Assembly (NCBI RefSeq): GCF_902713615.1
Contig: NC_052154.1
Location: 43,753,306 to 43,817,305 of the forward strand
Direction of reading: 5' to 3'
Source of the DNA: Scyliorhinus canicula
Taxonomy: Eukaryota
DNA: 64,000 bases
This document shows positions 3,192-46,824 of the stretch, in pieces. The notes under the pieces were generated by a model. It ran no database searches and was not told where the DNA came from. It was given only the letters and a program-made list of their open reading frames with translations. Each line of letters opens with the position of its first letter. Within the stretch, counting starts at the first letter, position 1. A program made the position numbers and the translations under genes.

Positions 3192-3276
3192 TTAATTCAA
3201 TCGAAGATTTGGGTTTTTGTGACTGCCATTTTTCAATCTTTCCTTTCCATCATTTGATATGTTGTTCACCAGAATC
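3192..3276 (-). CDS. Ig-NLR last coding exon (WILVNNISNDGKERLKNGSHKNPNLRLN-stop)
   Basis: Acceptor gttttttttcttttag, phase 2, terminal LRR/cap, TAA at 3194-3192. A strong donor (GAG|GTATGT) follows at 3169. Confidence 0.88.
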
Positions 3277-45500: not shown

Positions 45501-46824
45501 CCCACCAATATTTATTTACAATAACGATATTACAGGAGCAAACAGTGCTGCTAGCAGTCCAGTCAACTTAAGACTCTTCGCAAAGCCTACACAGGTGATT
45601 ATATGGGCCCCCTCAATTGGCCAACCAATAAAGTCAATTGGAGTTCATTACAACAGGCAAGATGGAAAGGTTGGTGGGGTAGCTTTGTCCATATGGCATG
45701 GAATAAGCACAATCGCAAGAAATGATCTTGGATTGGAAGATGTAGAATCCATATGGGTAGAGATTAGAAATAACAAGAGGAAGAAGAGACATTGGTGGGA
45801 GTAGTCTGTATGCACTCAAACAGTTGCTACACTGTGGGACATAGAATAAATCAGGAGACAAGGAGGACAGTAAAAAAAGAGCAGTACATTAATCTTGGGT
45901 GACTTTAATCTTCGTGCTGATTGGGAAAATCAAATTGGCAAAAGTAGCCATGAGGAAGAATTCATAGAGTATTCAGGACAGTTTTCTAGACAAATATGTT
46001 GTGGATTCGACCAGGGAACAGGCTATTTTGGATCTGGTAATGTGTAAAGAAGCAGGTTTAATAAACAATCTCAAAGTAAAAAATCCCAGAGGAAACAATG
46101 ACCATAACATGGTATAATTTCACATTCAGTTTGAAGAGTGAGAAACTGGGACAGAACTATGCAAAACCTAAACAAGTGCAATTATAAAGGATTTGAGGCA
46201 TAGTTGACTGGAGTGAACTGGGAAAGGAACTTAGCAGAAAAGAAGGTTGATCACCAATGGCAGATATTTCTGAAAATAGTTCATAACTCGCTCCTTAACA
46301 TTTTTGGGTCCGCTGCTTCCTGTATCTTTCTGGGTGAGGTTGAGTCTTGGGGCTGCTGGTGTTGGCGAATATTTCCCAGTTTGTCTGCTTCATTCTGGAA
46401 TCTGTTTGATGTTTATGCAAAAAAAAACTGACCAGACCAGAAAGTTTTTGTGGATGGTGAGGAAAGGACAGAACTGGCAAACTAGAAGAGTATGTACAAT
46501 ACATGTTAGAGGCGCAGTCACAGCCATTTGTGACTTCCTGTTTCCTTAAGATAGTTCAGCTGAAAAGAAAACTTCAGGAAGACAGTCTTTTTGGTAATTC
46601 TGAAATATATCAAGCATTAGGTTTATTTTTATCATCAAAAATAACATTAACCGGAATAATTATGTATCTTTCCACCTATGGAATGAATCCCTCGTACGAA
46701 GGTTTACTTTTACCCCGCCCAGAAGTGACTTCCTTATTCGTAGCAACAAAGGCGAAGGAATTCTTCACTCACCTGCTAAAGAAACTATGCAAAATATCCC
46801 GAGTTGTACTAGAAAGTAGTTCAT
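3192..46824 (-). CDS. Predicted 13-coding-exon gene: signal peptide-IgV-IgC1-TM-degenerate IgC1-CARD-NACHT-LRR (transmembrane Ig-NLR), 1314 aa
   Basis: Exons 46824-46773, 42265-41927, 32105-31776, 28043-27939, 25925-25491, 24580-24143, 21333-19596, 16363-16277, 14824-14741, 14606-14523, 12370-12287, 6591-6508 and 3276-3192 all have canonical AG/GT boundaries. Phases are compatible (six phase-1, then six phase-2 introns). Lengths sum to 3945 nt (1314 aa + stop) with no internal stop. That this is one transcript is an inference. Confidence 0.8.
3790..4900. mobile_element. CR1 LINE 3' fragments in both orientations with a SINE (4101-4420, +) between them
   Basis: CR1 ORF2 C-terminal motifs (EMRKCFFTQRVLGFWDSL; RVVNLWNS-like). 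The SINE has a tRNA-like head with B box GGTTCGATTCC. Confidence 0.75.
5490..5712 (-). mobile_element. tRNA-derived SINE (shark HE1-like family)
   Basis: Reverse-strand tRNA-like head (GGTTCGAATCCC) and shared body ggtggattggccatgctaaattgcccc. Similar copies at 12978-13210(+), 14160-14360(-), 36350-36735(+), 41090-41400(+), 44549-44897(+), 48850-49070(-), 54910-55180(-), 55215-55525(-) and 56666-56980(+). The family name is a recollection. Confidence 0.8.
6508..6591 (-). CDS. Ig-NLR LRR exon (LGDNDITEKGSGYFRSALEMNDTLEEL)
   Basis: 84 nt, phase 2-2, acceptor tacttgtttgtag, donor TG|GTAAGA. Confidence 0.92.
7350..8060 (-). mobile_element. LINE ORF2 3' end (L2/Crack-like), degraded
   Basis: Frameshifted ...SPTTLKKLNTAQDK / LIGTTSTTLNIHSLHH...TIYKMHCSNSPRLLRQHL... 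RT C-terminal region. Confidence 0.6.
8530..12105. mobile_element. Degenerate PIF/Harbinger DNA transposon: Myb/SANT-like gene (+) and DDE transposase (-) convergent
   Basis: Left end gggtgagattctcc. MAARKATPRFTDAKLET...WAQVAEAVSA (Myb/SANT-like) at about 8768-8940. HARBI1-like PLAVKV...FYTT...QASSGDLSRISQTSVHRYI at 11599-11817 (-). Many frameshifts and a SINE/LINE insert near 8950-9320. Confidence 0.75.
12287..12370 (-). CDS. Ig-NLR LRR exon (LQFNKIGDEGAKYMAQAMKTNRSLVEL)
   Basis: 84 nt, phase 2-2, acceptor tttgtcctacttcag, donor AG|GTAAGC. Confidence 0.93.
14523..14606 (-). CDS. Ig-NLR LRR exon (LRANTVGAKGARSIAEALEINTTLRVFG)
   Basis: 84 nt, phase 2-2, acceptor ctttgttttcacaag, donor GG|GTATGT. 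Confidence 0.92.
14741..14824 (-). CDS. Ig-NLR LRR exon (RLKHNSIREKGAAQIAEALKTNSSLKTLG)
   Basis: 84 nt, phase 2-2, acceptor aattttcacag, donor GG|GTATGT. Confidence 0.93.
15016..15614. mobile_element. CpG-rich Harbinger-type MITE
   Basis: TIR-like ends gggccggggttctcc / gaattccacccc, GC/CpG-rich interior, related to the copy at 57239-57840. Confidence 0.65.
16277..16363 (-). CDS. Ig-NLR LRR exon (SLEGNMLEDEGAEIIANALKNETCRIEIL)
   Basis: 87 nt, phase 2-2, AG/GT boundaries, ribonuclease-inhibitor-type LRR. Confidence 0.92.
16850..17320 (+). mobile_element. Penelope-like element 3' fragment
   Basis: LKIVSQ...LCVLEATYIN.CRQKEHVHILRLFQL resembles the C-terminus of the PLE GIY-YIG domain. Confidence 0.6.
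17318..17490 (+). mobile_element. Short tRNA-derived SINE (second family)
   Basis: ggggctggtttagcacaatgggctaaa...ggttcaattccc A/B boxes, with tail ttcacagtaacttcattg...gtgacaataag. Confidence 0.75.
19596..21333 (-). CDS. Ig-NLR exon 7: FISNA-like segment + NACHT NTPase + HD1/WHD/HD2 + first LRRs
   Basis: Walker A GVAGIGKS, Walker B LFLFDGLDE, sensor-1 LITSRP, EILGFS, FFHLTHQEFFAALY, LRFTAGL and HCLYE. Preceded by a FISNA-like FTSLVI...EHEL...IDLKQLL segment. Single 1738-nt exon, phase 1 to phase 2 (TTG AG|GTATTG), as is typical of NLR NACHT exons. Confidence 0.96.
21555..22190 (-). mobile_element. CR1 LINE 3' end
   Basis: YSLEFRRLRGDLIETYKII...RTRGHSLRIRGGKFRTEMRRHFFSQRMVGLWNSLP, plus a cttatggt-type 3' microsatellite tail. 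Confidence 0.9.
24143..24580 (-). CDS. Ig-NLR exon 6: CARD-type death-fold domain plus linker
   Basis: AIEEGRRTLVNYI...LLHLLMSKKIISEGDHNEIK...KGRTLLDMLSHRGQQSSAEFLEVL matches the six-helix CARD pattern. 438 nt, phase 1-1, acceptor tcattcttaacag, donor GAAG|GTAAGT. Confidence 0.85.
25491..25925 (-). CDS. Ig-NLR exon 5: degenerate IgC1-like domain (predicted cytoplasmic)
   Basis: VAPKVTD...LACAVLWFKPKAINISWYR...SGAYSLISQLT...YSFEVQHDAL...LEIK keeps the C1 pattern, but the F-strand Cys codon is TTT (Phe) and there are about 35 extra residues. 435 nt, phase 1-1, acceptor gtttgtttttcag, donor G|GTGAGC. Confidence 0.85.
26190..26960 (-). mobile_element. CR1 LINE 3' end
   Basis: LERVQKRFTRMLP...RGDLIEVYKIMRG...FTQRVVSAWKKLPGEVVEA. 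Confidence 0.9.
27939..28043 (-). CDS. Ig-NLR exon 4: transmembrane helix GSKPRSG-ILLTFLLTCVITAVVCVATFNFY-SRKIK
   Basis: 105-nt phase 1-1 exon (acceptor gtcttgcatttttacag, donor AAG|GTAAAT). It encodes about 23 apolar residues followed by basic RKIK (positive-inside rule). Too short for the ORF track. Confidence 0.85.
30131..30836. mobile_element. Harbinger-type MITE with TAA target-site duplication
   Basis: TIRs GGGCGCGATTCTCC / GGAGAATTTCACCC, flanked by TAA on both sides (30128-30130, 30837-30839), the PIF/Harbinger TSD signature. Nested in an older Harbinger derivative (about 30105-31585). Confidence 0.88.
31776..32105 (-). CDS. Ig-NLR exon 3: Ig C1-set domain
   Basis: APPTVSV...IICEMKHFYPEDHSLSWLK...NQDGTFNLLSFL...SYVCQVSHEAL...LTIK contains the C1-set motifs CxxxxFYP, W, DGTF and YxCxVxH. 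330 nt, phase 1-1, acceptor ttatgtctttgtag, donor G|GTGAGT. Confidence 0.93.
32613..33339. mobile_element. Harbinger-type MITE, same family as 30131-30836, opposite orientation
   Basis: TIRs GGGCGCGATTCTC / GGAGAATCGCGCCC. The interior aligns by eye with the reverse complement of 30131-30836. Confidence 0.85.
34986..37115. repeat. 39-bp minisatellite (about 35 copies in 34986-36352, remnants to about 37115), interrupted by a SINE and a solo LTR
   Basis: Consensus approximately TATTCCTACAGTTCTATCTGTATCCATAACTGTCCCTCG with degenerate copies. Confidence 0.92.
36752..36990 (+). mobile_element. Solo LTR with 5-bp TSD ATAAC
   Basis: Starts TGTTAG, has AATAAA at 36947-36952, ends ...CTACTAAA (a degenerate CA end). 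ATAAC lies at 36747-36751 and 36991-36995. Confidence 0.7.
37858..39063. repeat. 603-bp head-to-tail tandem duplication of an L2-like LINE fragment
   Basis: Units 37858-38460 and 38461-39063. The paired ORFs are offset by exactly 603. About 7 substitutions seen between the copies. Confidence 0.92.
39193..39270. repeat. 26-bp x3 tandem repeat
   Basis: CTGTAATGCAGGAAACATGGCACCAA repeated three times. Confidence 0.9.
41927..42265 (-). CDS. Ig-NLR exon 2: Ig V-set domain (B7/tapasin/butyrophilin-like)
   Basis: ASLEVVVVP...LLGCLF...IEWNH...NASLLLKNVTIHDIGSYSCTV...VTLAVT: B-strand Cys, C-strand Trp, DxGxYxC motif, an extra Cys pair and three N-glycosylation sequons (NAT, NAS, NVT). Acceptor ttttttcgtgcag, donor G|GTGAGT, 339 nt, phase 1-1. 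Confidence 0.92.
43170..46200 (+). mobile_element. CR1 ORF2 endonuclease region split by the Gypsy insertion
   Basis: Degenerate AIT.TWLQGDQNWELNIQ.Y...KDR|QDGK.GGVA...GDFN APE-type endonuclease motifs continue across the TSD. Confidence 0.75.
43287..45652 (-). mobile_element. Internally deleted Ty3/Gypsy element with tRNA-Ser PBS, inserted into a CR1
   Basis: 5' LTR 45652-45467; PBS TGGCGACGAGG at 45465-45455; gag 45391-44852; SINE insert; protease IDTGAA; RT to ...LPFGVSSACAIFQRTMENI; then only 17 bp of 3' LTR (43303-43287). TSD ACAGG at 43282-43286 and 45653-45657. Confidence 0.92.
46773..46824 (-). CDS. Ig-NLR exon 1: signal peptide MNYFLVQLGIFCIVSLA
   Basis: ATG at 46824 with A at -3, 17 mostly hydrophobic codons plus G, then donor AG|GTGAGT (phase 1). 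This is the usual Ig-superfamily leader exon layout. Confidence 0.85.

What the first reader, a model, noticed from the sequence alone, without database searches (positions are those of the whole stretch)
3192..46824. Transmembrane NLR: Ig V-C1 ectodomain and TM helix fused to a complete CARD-NACHT-LRR
Seen in sequence: 13 exons with canonical splice sites and matching phases give one stop-free 1314-aa ORF. Approximate layout: leader (aa 1-17), IgV (18-130), IgC1 (131-240), TM helix (about 248-270, followed by RKIK), degenerate IgC1 (276-420), CARD exon (421-566), FISNA/NACHT exon (567-1145), RI-type LRRs (to 1314). Established: characterised vertebrate NLRs (NOD1/2, NLRC3/4/5, NLRPs, teleost FISNA-NLRs) are soluble cytosolic sensors without a signal peptide or TM, while V+C1+TM ectodomains are typical of B7-H6, tapasin/TAPBPR and related IgSF proteins. 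Inference: a surface or organellar receptor in which extracellular or luminal ligand binding could cluster a membrane-tethered NLR and signal through its CARD, linking IgSF recognition to NOD or inflammasome-type signalling. I do not recall a named vertebrate protein with this architecture, but I could not search.
Basis: partly seen in the sequence, partly recalled or inferred. Interest (0 to 1): 0.96.

Follow-up and report, generated by a model that had tools for sequence, protein, structure and literature searches.

The report
Membrane-anchored shark NLR with B7-H6-like ectodomain
This catshark gene really does encode one protein in which a cell-surface immunoglobulin module of the B7-H6 (natural-killer-cell ligand) family is joined through a membrane anchor to a complete intracellular NOD-like immune sensor. 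The fusion is conserved in sharks and rays, and I found no paper that describes it.

Summary
Thirteen minus-strand exons with AG/GT borders give a stop-free 1314-aa ORF: signal peptide, IgV, IgC1, TM, degenerate C1, CARD, NACHT, LRR. The ORF is 100% identical to the RefSeq model 'protein NLRC3-like [Scyliorhinus canicula]'.

RNA contigs from three studies carry the critical spliced joints TM>C1*>CARD. One 6.3-kb contig spans leader to 3'UTR.

Twelve elasmobranch species (eight sharks, four rays) have the same architecture, at 69-87% identity. Walker A, sensor 1 and the WHD histidine motif are invariant or nearly so. No unfused orthologue was found: the next NLRs are at most 31% identical in the NACHT region.

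New here: the whole 5' half is a B7-H6/NCR3LG1-family module.
- The ectodomain's best solved match is human B7-H6 (E 1e-24).
- Shark and turtle B7H6 proteins also have V-C1-TM followed by C1-like domains.
- C1* is homologous to their first post-TM domain (hhalign 93%, E 3e-7). It is modelled as a C1-set Ig fold.

So this is an ancient B7H6-paralogue::CARD-NLR fusion. Type I topology and the signalling mechanism are inferred, not shown. I found no paper describing it. A sea-cucumber Ig-TM-NACHT receptor is an analogue.

The parts
46773..46824 (-). Exon 1, coding part: ATG and signal peptide (aa 1-17), donor GT, phase 1. Transcribed sequence continues upstream; the 5' end is unresolved.
   Evidence: The X1 RNA contig joins 46773 to the IgV exon at 42265 (record 4752/4753). 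Coverage in X3, X4 and X8 stops near 46887-46899, whereas the X1 contig runs on to about 48354.
41927..42265 (-). IgV exon (aa 18-130). Cys40/Cys112 and the sequons N94-A-S and N101-x-T are invariant in 12 species.
   Evidence: Pfam V-set; RNA contig with 0 mismatches; alignment A1.
31776..32105 (-). IgC1 exon (aa 131-240), Cys154/Cys220, YVCQVSH motif.
   Evidence: Pfam C1-set 7e-12 on the exon ORF and 2.6e-16 on the whole protein. The 328+2 nt gap in the X1 contig between the TM and IgV pieces equals this exon's 330 nt. The RefSeq model is identical.
27939..28043 (-). TM exon (aa 241-275): hydrophobic helix aa ~247-270, followed by SRKIK.
   Evidence: KD 2.63. Spliced joint 25925|27939 in runs X1, X3 and X4. 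Hydrophobic character is kept in all 12 orthologues. It aligns with the TM of nurse shark B7H6.
25491..25925 (-). C1* exon (aa 276-420): C1-set-like Ig domain on the cytosolic side. The second Cys is replaced by an invariant Phe, and there is a disordered insertion of ~15-35 aa.
   Evidence: Pfam C1-set partial. AF2 pLDDT 79, 8 strands. Foldseek matches MHC-II alpha2 and Ig CL. hhalign to the first post-TM domain of B7H6: 93%, E 3.4e-7. Spliced on both sides in RNA.
24143..24580 (-). CARD exon (aa 421-566): CARD core ~aa 441-525 plus linker.
   Evidence: Pfam CARD 1e-10. Profile against PDB: ICEBERG 1e-9, NOD1 2e-5. Joint 24580|25491 in X1, X3 and X4. Skipped in predicted isoforms of Narcine and Pristiophorus.
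19596..21333 (-). NACHT exon (aa 567-1145): pre-NACHT region, NACHT NTPase, WHD/HD2, first LRRs; ends in phase 2.
   Evidence: Pfam NACHT 2e-33, NLRC4_HD2. Best PDB matches: NOD2 3e-60, NLRP3 5e-57. Across 12 species the WHD 'FFHLTHQEFFAA' motif is invariant. Walker A, Walker B and sensor 1 keep an invariant core with only conservative changes at its edges.
16277..16363 (-). LRR exon 1 (87 nt)
14741..14824 (-). LRR exon 2 (84 nt)
14523..14606 (-). LRR exon 3 (84 nt)
12287..12370 (-). LRR exon 4 (84 nt)
6508..6591 (-). LRR exon 5 (84 nt)
3192..3276 (-). Last coding exon (LRR 6 and stop TAA at 3194-3192). The 3'UTR of about 860 nt is inferred to continue downstream to ~2330.
   Evidence: The X1 contig has 3105 nt 3' of the CARD exon, against 2246 nt of coding sequence; the UTR length is arithmetic only.

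Best explanation
This is one real, expressed, single-copy gene of the small-spotted catshark. It arose before sharks and rays diverged, by fusion of two parts. The 5' half came from a B7-H6 (NCR3LG1)-family gene: leader, IgV, IgC1, TM and the first post-TM C1-like domain. The 3' half is a CARD-NACHT-LRR gene.

The product is most likely a type I single-pass membrane protein. The glycosylated, disulfide-bonded V-C1 ectodomain faces outside (or the lumen). C1*, CARD, an ATPase-competent NACHT and a short RI-type LRR lie in the cytosol.

How it works is inferred, not shown. The membrane anchor couples B7-H6-type recognition across the membrane to NACHT oligomerisation and CARD-CARD recruitment. 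The slow evolution of the ectodomain suggests a conserved endogenous partner, such as an NKp30-like receptor.

My ranking of the directions:
- About 45%: outside-in, proximity-induced assembly. Engagement clusters the ectodomain, which nucleates the NLR/CARD platform, as a death receptor or TLR does.
- About 25%: inside-out. Cytosolic activation of the NLR clusters the B7-H6-like ligand for recognition by a killer cell.
- About 20%: the anchor only places the sensor at a particular membrane.
For: Gene model: 13 exons, AG/GT borders, 1314 aa. It is 100% identical to the RefSeq protein P0161.

RNA:
- Spliced joints CARD|C1* and C1*|TM, with CT..AC ends (GT..AG on the minus strand), occur in runs of three studies.
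- A single 6328-nt contig covers, in order: about 3.1 kb of 3' sequence, then CARD, C1*, TM, a 330-nt gap, IgV, and the leader.
- The IgV exon is held by 10 of the 14 RNA runs that hold the NACHT exon.

Conservation:
- The same architecture occurs in 12 elasmobranch species.
- The exon order is identical in the sawfish locus.
- Shark-versus-ray identity is V 0.71, C1 0.70, C1* 0.52, CARD 0.63, NACHT 0.79, LRR 0.78.
- The WHD histidine motif is invariant. Walker A, Walker B and sensor 1 vary only conservatively at their edges.
- No unfused orthologue was found: the next NLRs are at most 31% identical.

B7H6 origin:
- The ectodomain's best PDB hits are B7-H6 structures 3pv6, 4zso and 6yjp, E ~1e-24 over V plus C1.
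- Aa 16-275 align at 29% identity with nurse shark B7H6, including the TM.
- Shark and turtle B7H6 have one TM followed by C1-set domains.
- C1* against their first post-TM domain: hhalign 93%, E 3.4e-7, full length.
- C1* is modelled as a C1-set Ig fold.

Topology:
- There are only two hydrophobic segments.
- The Cys pairs and the two sequons N94-A-S and N101-x-T are invariant in the ectodomain.
- The second Cys of C1* is Phe in all 12 species.
Against: - No protein-level evidence exists. Signal-peptide cleavage, membrane insertion, glycosylation and localisation are all predicted.
- The signal peptide has no basic n-region, and in most orthologues it carries a Glu early in the hydrophobic stretch.
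- The later post-TM C1 domains of shark B7H6 keep both cysteines. This sits oddly with a cytosolic location, so the family's topology deserves a direct test.
- RNA support comes from assembled contigs, not raw reads. The runs' RNA status is 'guessed' by the tool.
- The transcript's 5' end is unresolved.
- The CARD's partner cannot be named from sequence: ICEBERG, NOD1, caspase-1 and RIPK2 CARDs all match weakly.
- The direction of signalling is pure inference.
Confidence: 0.85

Rival explanations
1. These are two neighbouring genes: an IgSF V-C1-TM gene and a CARD-NACHT-LRR gene. The joined ORF would then be a by-product of symmetric exon phases, or a minor read-through transcript.
For: All Ig, CARD and TM exons are phase 1-1, so any concatenation stays in frame. 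CARD-less isoforms are predicted in two species, which shows that exon skipping is tolerated.
Against: Spliced TM>C1*>CARD joints occur in three independent studies, and one contig spans everything. The fused ORF is kept in 12 species across the shark-ray split. No orthologue of the NLR half without the Ig half was found. Among the loose ends that one search lists (49 more are not shown), none lies at the CARD exon's 5' border, which an alternative first exon would produce.
Confidence: 0.03
2. The transcript is real, but the protein is not a type I membrane protein. Either the N-terminal hydrophobic stretch does not act as a signal peptide, so the whole chain is cytosolic and perhaps tail- or hairpin-associated with membranes. 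Or the hydrophobic 'TM' is a buried or linker element.
For: The leader is atypical: no basic n-region, and Glu in the h-region of most orthologues. C1-set domains after the TM are unprecedented for a cytosolic location. Shark B7H6 keeps cysteine pairs in its later post-TM domains.
Against: The V-C1 part is homologous over its full length to B7-H6, whose ectodomain is solved in complex with NKp30. The leader/V boundary motif is shared with B7H6, whose leader is typical. The Ig cysteine pairs and the N-glycosylation sequons are invariant. The TM hydropathy of 2.63 over 19 residues is kept in all orthologues. NACHT ATPases need cytosolic nucleotide.
Confidence: 0.1
3. The gene functions essentially as a B7H6-type ligand or adhesion molecule. 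The NLR half would be a decaying or purely regulatory tail with no signalling of its own.
For: Canonical shark and turtle B7H6 have long non-enzymatic tails. CARD-less isoforms are predicted.
Against: The NACHT and LRR are the most conserved parts of the protein (0.79 and 0.78 shark versus ray). The nucleotide-binding and sensor motifs are kept in all 12 species, varying only conservatively at their edges. That is strong purifying selection on an active STAND module.
Confidence: 0.05

Closest known systems
B7-H6 / NCR3LG1 family (human B7-H6; nurse shark B7H6 QTT61906.1; turtle NCR3LG1)
   Same: The leader-IgV-IgC1-TM layout is the same. The ectodomain's best solved match is human B7-H6 (E 1e-24), and it is 29% identical to nurse shark B7H6 across V, C1 and TM. 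The C1-like domain directly after the TM is homologous to the first post-TM domain of shark and turtle B7H6.
   Different: It is a paralogue, not the orthologue: sharks keep a separate B7H6 of ~1090 aa. After the first post-TM domain the tail is replaced by CARD-NACHT-LRR. Binding to NKp30 is untested.
Vertebrate CARD-type NLRs (NOD1, NOD2, NLRC3) and NLRP3
   Same: It has a CARD, a NACHT with Walker A/B, sensor 1 and the WHD His, an HD2, RI-type LRRs encoded by 84-nt phase-2 exons, and one large NACHT exon. The best solved matches are NOD2 (3e-60) and NLRP3 (5e-57).
   Different: It has a signal peptide, an Ig ectodomain and a TM. It is only 26-31% identical in the NACHT region to any other NLR, including genuine NLRC3 of sharks, so the RefSeq name 'NLRC3-like' does not reflect orthology. 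Its LRR is short, about 8 repeats.
Sea cucumber AjNLRC4 (PMC8699970; also PMC13133943)
   Same: It is a published membrane receptor with extracellular Ig domains and an intracellular NACHT. It is shown at the cell surface, binds microbes through its Ig domains and oligomerises.
   Different: According to the paper it has two predicted TM segments and no CARD or LRR, and it signals to actin for phagocytosis. It is an echinoderm protein. No sequence relationship was tested here, so it is most likely a convergent architecture.
Death receptors and TLRs (analogy only, from general knowledge)
   Same: They are single-pass receptors whose ligand-induced clustering nucleates a cytosolic death-fold or TIR signalling assembly.
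   Different: They have no STAND ATPase. The ectodomain folds differ, and there is no homology.

Membership tests
NLR (NACHT-LRR) family | NACHT NTPase domain with intact Walker A, Walker B, sensor 1 and WHD histidine | tested here: met
   Pfam NACHT 7e-33. Motifs GVAGIGKS, LFLFDGLDE, TSRP and FFHLTHQEFFAA are kept in all 12 orthologues, with conservative changes only at the edges of the first three.
NLR (NACHT-LRR) family | C-terminal leucine-rich repeats of the ribonuclease-inhibitor type | tested here: met
   Pfam LRR_6 4e-13. PDB ribonuclease inhibitor 1e-29 over aa ~1110-1314.
NLR (NACHT-LRR) family | N-terminal death-fold effector domain (CARD or PYD) | tested here: met
   Pfam CARD 4.5e-10. 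Profile against PDB CARDs: ICEBERG 1e-9, NOD1 2e-5.
NLR (NACHT-LRR) family | Soluble cytosolic protein without signal peptide or TM (usual, not strictly defining) | tested here: not met
   A hydrophobic leader and one strong TM are present, conserved in 12 species.
NLRC3 orthologue group (the RefSeq name) | Orthology to NLRC3, i.e. closest relatives being NLRC3 proteins | tested here: not met
   The NACHT region is 26-31% identical to NLRC3 of birds, turtles, gar and zebra shark, against at least 77% to the Ig-bearing orthologues.
B7-H6 / NCR3LG1 family | IgV plus IgC1 ectodomain most similar to B7-H6, followed by one TM | tested here: met
   PDB 3pv6, 4zso and 6yjp at E ~1e-24, ahead of CD276 (5e-21) and TAPBPR (3e-17). 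BLASTP to nurse shark B7H6: 1e-30, including the TM.
B7-H6 / NCR3LG1 family | Post-TM C1-like domain, as in shark and turtle members | tested here: met
   hhalign A2 against A3: 93%, E 3.4e-7, 134 columns. C1-set fold by AF2 and Foldseek.
B7-H6 / NCR3LG1 family | Binds NKp30 (NCR3) | not testable with these tools
B7-H6 / NCR3LG1 family | One-to-one orthology with B7H6 | tested here: not met
   Separate B7H6 genes exist in nurse, whale and zebra sharks, at 26-29% identity to this protein.
Echinoderm Ig-TM-NACHT receptors (AjNLRC4 type) | Extracellular Ig domains, TM, intracellular NACHT, no CARD or LRR | not tested
   Compared only through the paper's description. The CARD and LRR present here differ from that build.

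The most novel reading that the evidence does not exclude
Elasmobranchs would have a 'death-receptor-like NLR': a B7-H6-family surface ligand hard-wired to an inflammasome- or nodosome-type engine. Either engagement by an NKp30-type receptor of a killer lymphocyte directly nucleates CARD signalling (death or cytokine release) in the engaged cell. Or cytosolic danger sensing by the NLR clusters the B7-H6-like ligand as a 'kill-me' flag. Either way this would be a direct physical link between NK-ligand recognition and NLR signalling. It would also imply that the C1-like tails of ancestral B7H6 proteins are genuine cytosolic signalling modules.
Probability: 0.3. Interest if true: 0.92.

Novelty: new variant of a known kind. 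Interest (0 to 1): 0.8.

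Why it matters
Vertebrate NLRs are taken to be soluble cytosolic sensors, and B7-H6 is taken to be a passive stress ligand for NKp30. This gene has been kept under purifying selection since before sharks and rays diverged, and it fuses the two.

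If the predicted topology holds, three things follow:
- NLR oligomerisation can be wired directly to cell-surface recognition in a jawed vertebrate.
- There is a natural experiment for proximity-induced NLR activation.
- Non-mammalian B7H6 proteins may signal through their unusual post-TM C1-like domains.

It also shows that the RefSeq label 'NLRC3-like' hides a distinct, orphan NLR lineage.

Tried and rejected
- Complex prediction of two copies of C1*, testing whether the cytosolic C1-like domain pairs like other C1 domains, gave 'no answer' (score 0.02). This is no evidence either way.
- Literature searches for a described vertebrate Ig-TM-NLR or a B7H6-NLR fusion found nothing apart from the echinoderm AjNLRC4 papers. 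The whale shark NLR survey does not mention this architecture in the passages searched.
- The two key B7H6 evolution papers (PMC3709836, PMC4594805) are not held. I therefore could not check whether the post-TM C1 domains of shark B7H6, or this fusion, are mentioned there.
- My first LRR motif scans missed the 84-nt exons. An AG/GT-bounded exon scan found them.
- A self-tblastn found no paralogous Ig or NLR exons elsewhere in the window.
- Rfam found nothing in the very highly represented repeat at 44.5-44.9 kb.
- The FISNA label is not supported at Pfam threshold (E 0.029).
- Earlier scan notes: s1-270771 (cytoplasmic C1) agrees with this report and is now explained by B7H6 ancestry. s1-270819 (promoter motifs at 46870-47058) is compatible with coverage ending near 46.89 kb in three runs, but the X1 contig reads through that stretch.

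Full report
**Observation**

I rebuilt the gene from the raw window. On the minus strand, 13 exons with AG acceptors and GT donors join into a 3945-nt CDS. They are, in order:
- leader 46824-46773
- IgV 42265-41927
- IgC1 32105-31776
- TM 28043-27939
- C1* 25925-25491
- CARD 24580-24143
- NACHT 21333-19596
- six short LRR exons ending with the stop at 3192

The phase is 1 up to the NACHT exon and 2 afterwards, as is usual for 84-nt NLR LRR exons. The product is 1314 aa.

Pfam recognises V-set, C1-set, CARD, NACHT, NLRC4_HD2 and LRR_6. Hydropathy shows only two strongly hydrophobic stretches, the leader and aa 247-265. Because all these exon types are symmetric in phase, a stop-free concatenation is not proof of one gene, so I looked for independent evidence.

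**One transcript**

Many RNA runs hold the NACHT exon. Contigs of four such runs, each from a different study, were laid on 22101-28100. Three of them (X1, X3, X4) show spliced joints 24580|25491 (CARD to C1*) and 25925|27939 (C1* to TM). The joints have CT..AC ends, which is GT..AG on the minus strand.

In X1 a single 6328-nt contig carries CARD, C1* and TM in consecutive record positions. The same contig carries the IgV exon and the leader exon. The unplaced 328 nt between the TM and IgV pieces, plus 2 ambiguous nt, equal the 330-nt IgC1 exon. About 3.1 kb lies 3' of the CARD exon, matching NACHT plus LRRs plus an ~860-nt 3'UTR.

The IgV exon is held by 10 of the 14 RNA runs that hold the NACHT exon.

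My model is 100% identical over all 1314 residues to the RefSeq prediction 'protein NLRC3-like [Scyliorhinus canicula]' (P0161). So the window is catshark, and NCBI's pipeline reached the same structure.

**Conservation**

A HMMER scan of 1.8 billion representatives with the NACHT exon found one close cluster, represented by a Narcine bancroftii isoform at 78% identity. Everything else was at most 37% identical over the matched stretches, and the strongest of those hits were 29-36%.

Searching with the N-terminal part of that protein, with a 12-sequence profile, and with the NACHT region recovered the same V-C1-TM-C1*-CARD-NACHT-LRR protein in eight sharks and four rays:
- Sharks: Scyliorhinus, Mustelus, Carcharodon, Heterodontus, Chiloscyllium, Rhincodon, Pristiophorus, Heptranchias.
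- Rays: Pristis, Mobula, Hemitrygon, Narcine.

There is one gene per species, 69-87% identical to the catshark protein. Narcine and Pristiophorus also have predicted isoforms that skip the CARD exon.

The sawfish locus has the same exon order and the same upstream neighbour, POP4.

Shark-versus-ray identity by domain:

| Domain | Identity |
|---|---|
| IgV | 0.71 |
| IgC1 | 0.70 |
| TM exon | 0.45 (hydrophobicity kept) |
| C1* | 0.52 |
| CARD exon | 0.63 |
| NACHT | 0.79 |
| LRR | 0.78 |

The WHD motif FFHLTHQEFFAA is invariant. Walker A, Walker B and sensor 1 keep an invariant core with only conservative changes at their edges.

In the NACHT search the identity drops from 77% (all Ig-bearing) straight to 31% or less (NLRC3, NLRC3-like, NLRP3-like). 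No holocephalan or bony-vertebrate orthologue appears, fused or unfused. The fusion therefore predates the shark-ray split. The NLR half is an orphan lineage, and 'NLRC3-like' is a naming convenience, not orthology.

**Origin of the Ig half**

The ectodomain's best solved relatives are three human B7-H6/NCR3LG1 structures (E ~1e-24 over V and C1). These rank ahead of CD276 and TAPBPR.

Outside the orthologues, the best database matches to the N-terminal part are turtle NCR3LG1 and the shark B7H6 family. The latter includes the author-deposited nurse shark B7H6 (QTT61906.1).

Catshark aa 16-275 align with nurse shark B7H6 aa 32-288 at 29% identity, straight through the TM.

Unexpectedly, shark and turtle B7H6 proteins have a single TM near residue 230-290 and then continue for about 650-800 residues of C1-set-like domains. 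Their first post-TM domain has these features:
- It has about 146 aa in the sharks and about 121 aa in the turtles.
- It lacks the canonical cysteines.
- It starts right after a basic stop-transfer motif with 'VPPEII', compared with 'VAPKVT' here.
- In whale shark isoforms it behaves as one skippable unit of 147 aa.

A profile-profile comparison of the 12 C1* domains with that B7H6 domain gives 93% probability and E 3.4e-7 over the full length. AlphaFold2 on the joint alignment folds C1* as an eight-stranded sandwich (pLDDT 79, pTM 0.76) with a disordered insertion. Foldseek places the model with MHC class II alpha2 and antibody CL domains, which are C1-set.

So leader-V-C1-TM-C1* is the intact 5' portion of a B7H6-family gene. 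The 'cytoplasmic C1' is a family trait, not a peculiarity of this locus.

**The NLR half**

The best solved matches are NOD2 (3e-60) and NLRP3 (5e-57), and the C-terminus matches ribonuclease inhibitor.

The CARD profile matches ICEBERG best (1e-9), then NOD1, cIAP1, CARD11, caspase-1 and RIPK2 CARDs. The fold is clear, but the partner cannot be named.

**Topology (inferred)**

A leader plus one TM predicts a type I orientation. Supporting points:
- The V-C1 part is homologous to an ectodomain solved in complex with NKp30.
- Both Ig cysteine pairs and the V-domain N-glycosylation sequons N94-A-S and N101-x-T are invariant.
- The second cysteine of C1* is Phe in all 12 species.
- A NACHT ATPase needs the cytosol.

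Caveats:
- The leader is atypical.
- The later post-TM domains of B7H6 keep their cysteines.
- There are no protein data.

**Mechanism (inferred)**

The ectodomain evolves about as slowly as the CARD. That argues for a conserved endogenous partner rather than a pathogen arms race, and from family knowledge NKp30-type receptors are the obvious candidates.

The intact STAND switch argues that oligomerisation and nucleotide control still matter. I therefore read the protein as a device that couples B7-H6-type recognition and NLR/CARD assembly across the membrane. I favour proximity-induced outside-in activation (about 45%). Inside-out ligand clustering gets about 25%, and mere membrane placement about 20%.

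**Comparison and novelty**

I found no paper describing such a vertebrate protein in seven full-text searches. The library lacks most subscription journals, including the two main B7H6 evolution papers.

The closest published analogue is sea cucumber AjNLRC4, an Ig-TM-NACHT surface receptor without CARD or LRR.

The sequences themselves are public predictions under uninformative names. I class this as a new variant of a known kind: real, ancient and conserved, and of high interest to comparative immunology.

**Unresolved**

- The transcript's 5' end. Coverage stops near 46.89 kb in three runs. The X1 contig continues to about 48.35 kb, where a dispersed repeat sits, 1.2 kb short of POP4's last coding exon.
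- Tissue distribution.
- Presence in chimaeras.
- Ligand, partner and direction of signalling.

Noticed in passing
window 49584-49742, 51382-51504, 53528-53611 (minus strand): Three exon-sized matches (78-81% at protein level) to the gene upstream of the sawfish orthologue. That gene carries Pfam RNase_P-MRP_p29 (POP4). So POP4 lies just upstream of the NLR gene in the same orientation, and this synteny is kept between a shark and a ray.
   Followed up: partly
window 46825-~48354 (minus strand): In run X1 the RNA contig continues unspliced from the leader exon for ~1.5 kb upstream. It ends where a dispersed repeat begins (48331-48345). In X3, X4 and X8 coverage stops near 46887-46899. This is either a long 5'UTR or read-through from POP4.
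   Followed up: partly
window 43210-45391 (minus strand, intron 1): A retroelement remnant (Pfam gag-like PNMA, aspartyl protease and reverse transcriptase hits). It is transcribed in all four runs examined. RNA contigs of the element lack 44546-44897, a 352-nt insert.
   Followed up: partly
window 44500-44900; related copies near 48331 and 55020: A dispersed short repeat with enormous k-mer depth in RNA runs (1e5 to 6e5). It has no Rfam match and is probably an abundant SINE-like element.
   Followed up: partly
window 58722-60649 (minus strand); 548-1908 (minus strand): Further retroelement fragments: RT and zf-RVT at 58.7-60.6 kb, and a gag-type aspartyl protease at 0.5-1.2 kb.
   Followed up: partly
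P0170, P0167-P0169, P0164, P0165 (not in the window): Shark B7H6 and turtle NCR3LG1 proteins have a single TM followed by ~650-800 aa of C1-set-like domains, some with intact cysteine pairs. If the TM is genuine these are cytosolic C1 domains, which is unusual and seems little discussed. Whale shark isoforms differ by exactly one 147-aa post-TM domain.
   Followed up: partly
P0001 (Narcine), P0155 (Pristiophorus): Predicted isoforms join C1* directly to the NACHT exon, skipping the CARD exon. This is a possible natural dominant-negative or non-signalling form. It was not checked in catshark RNA.
   Followed up: no
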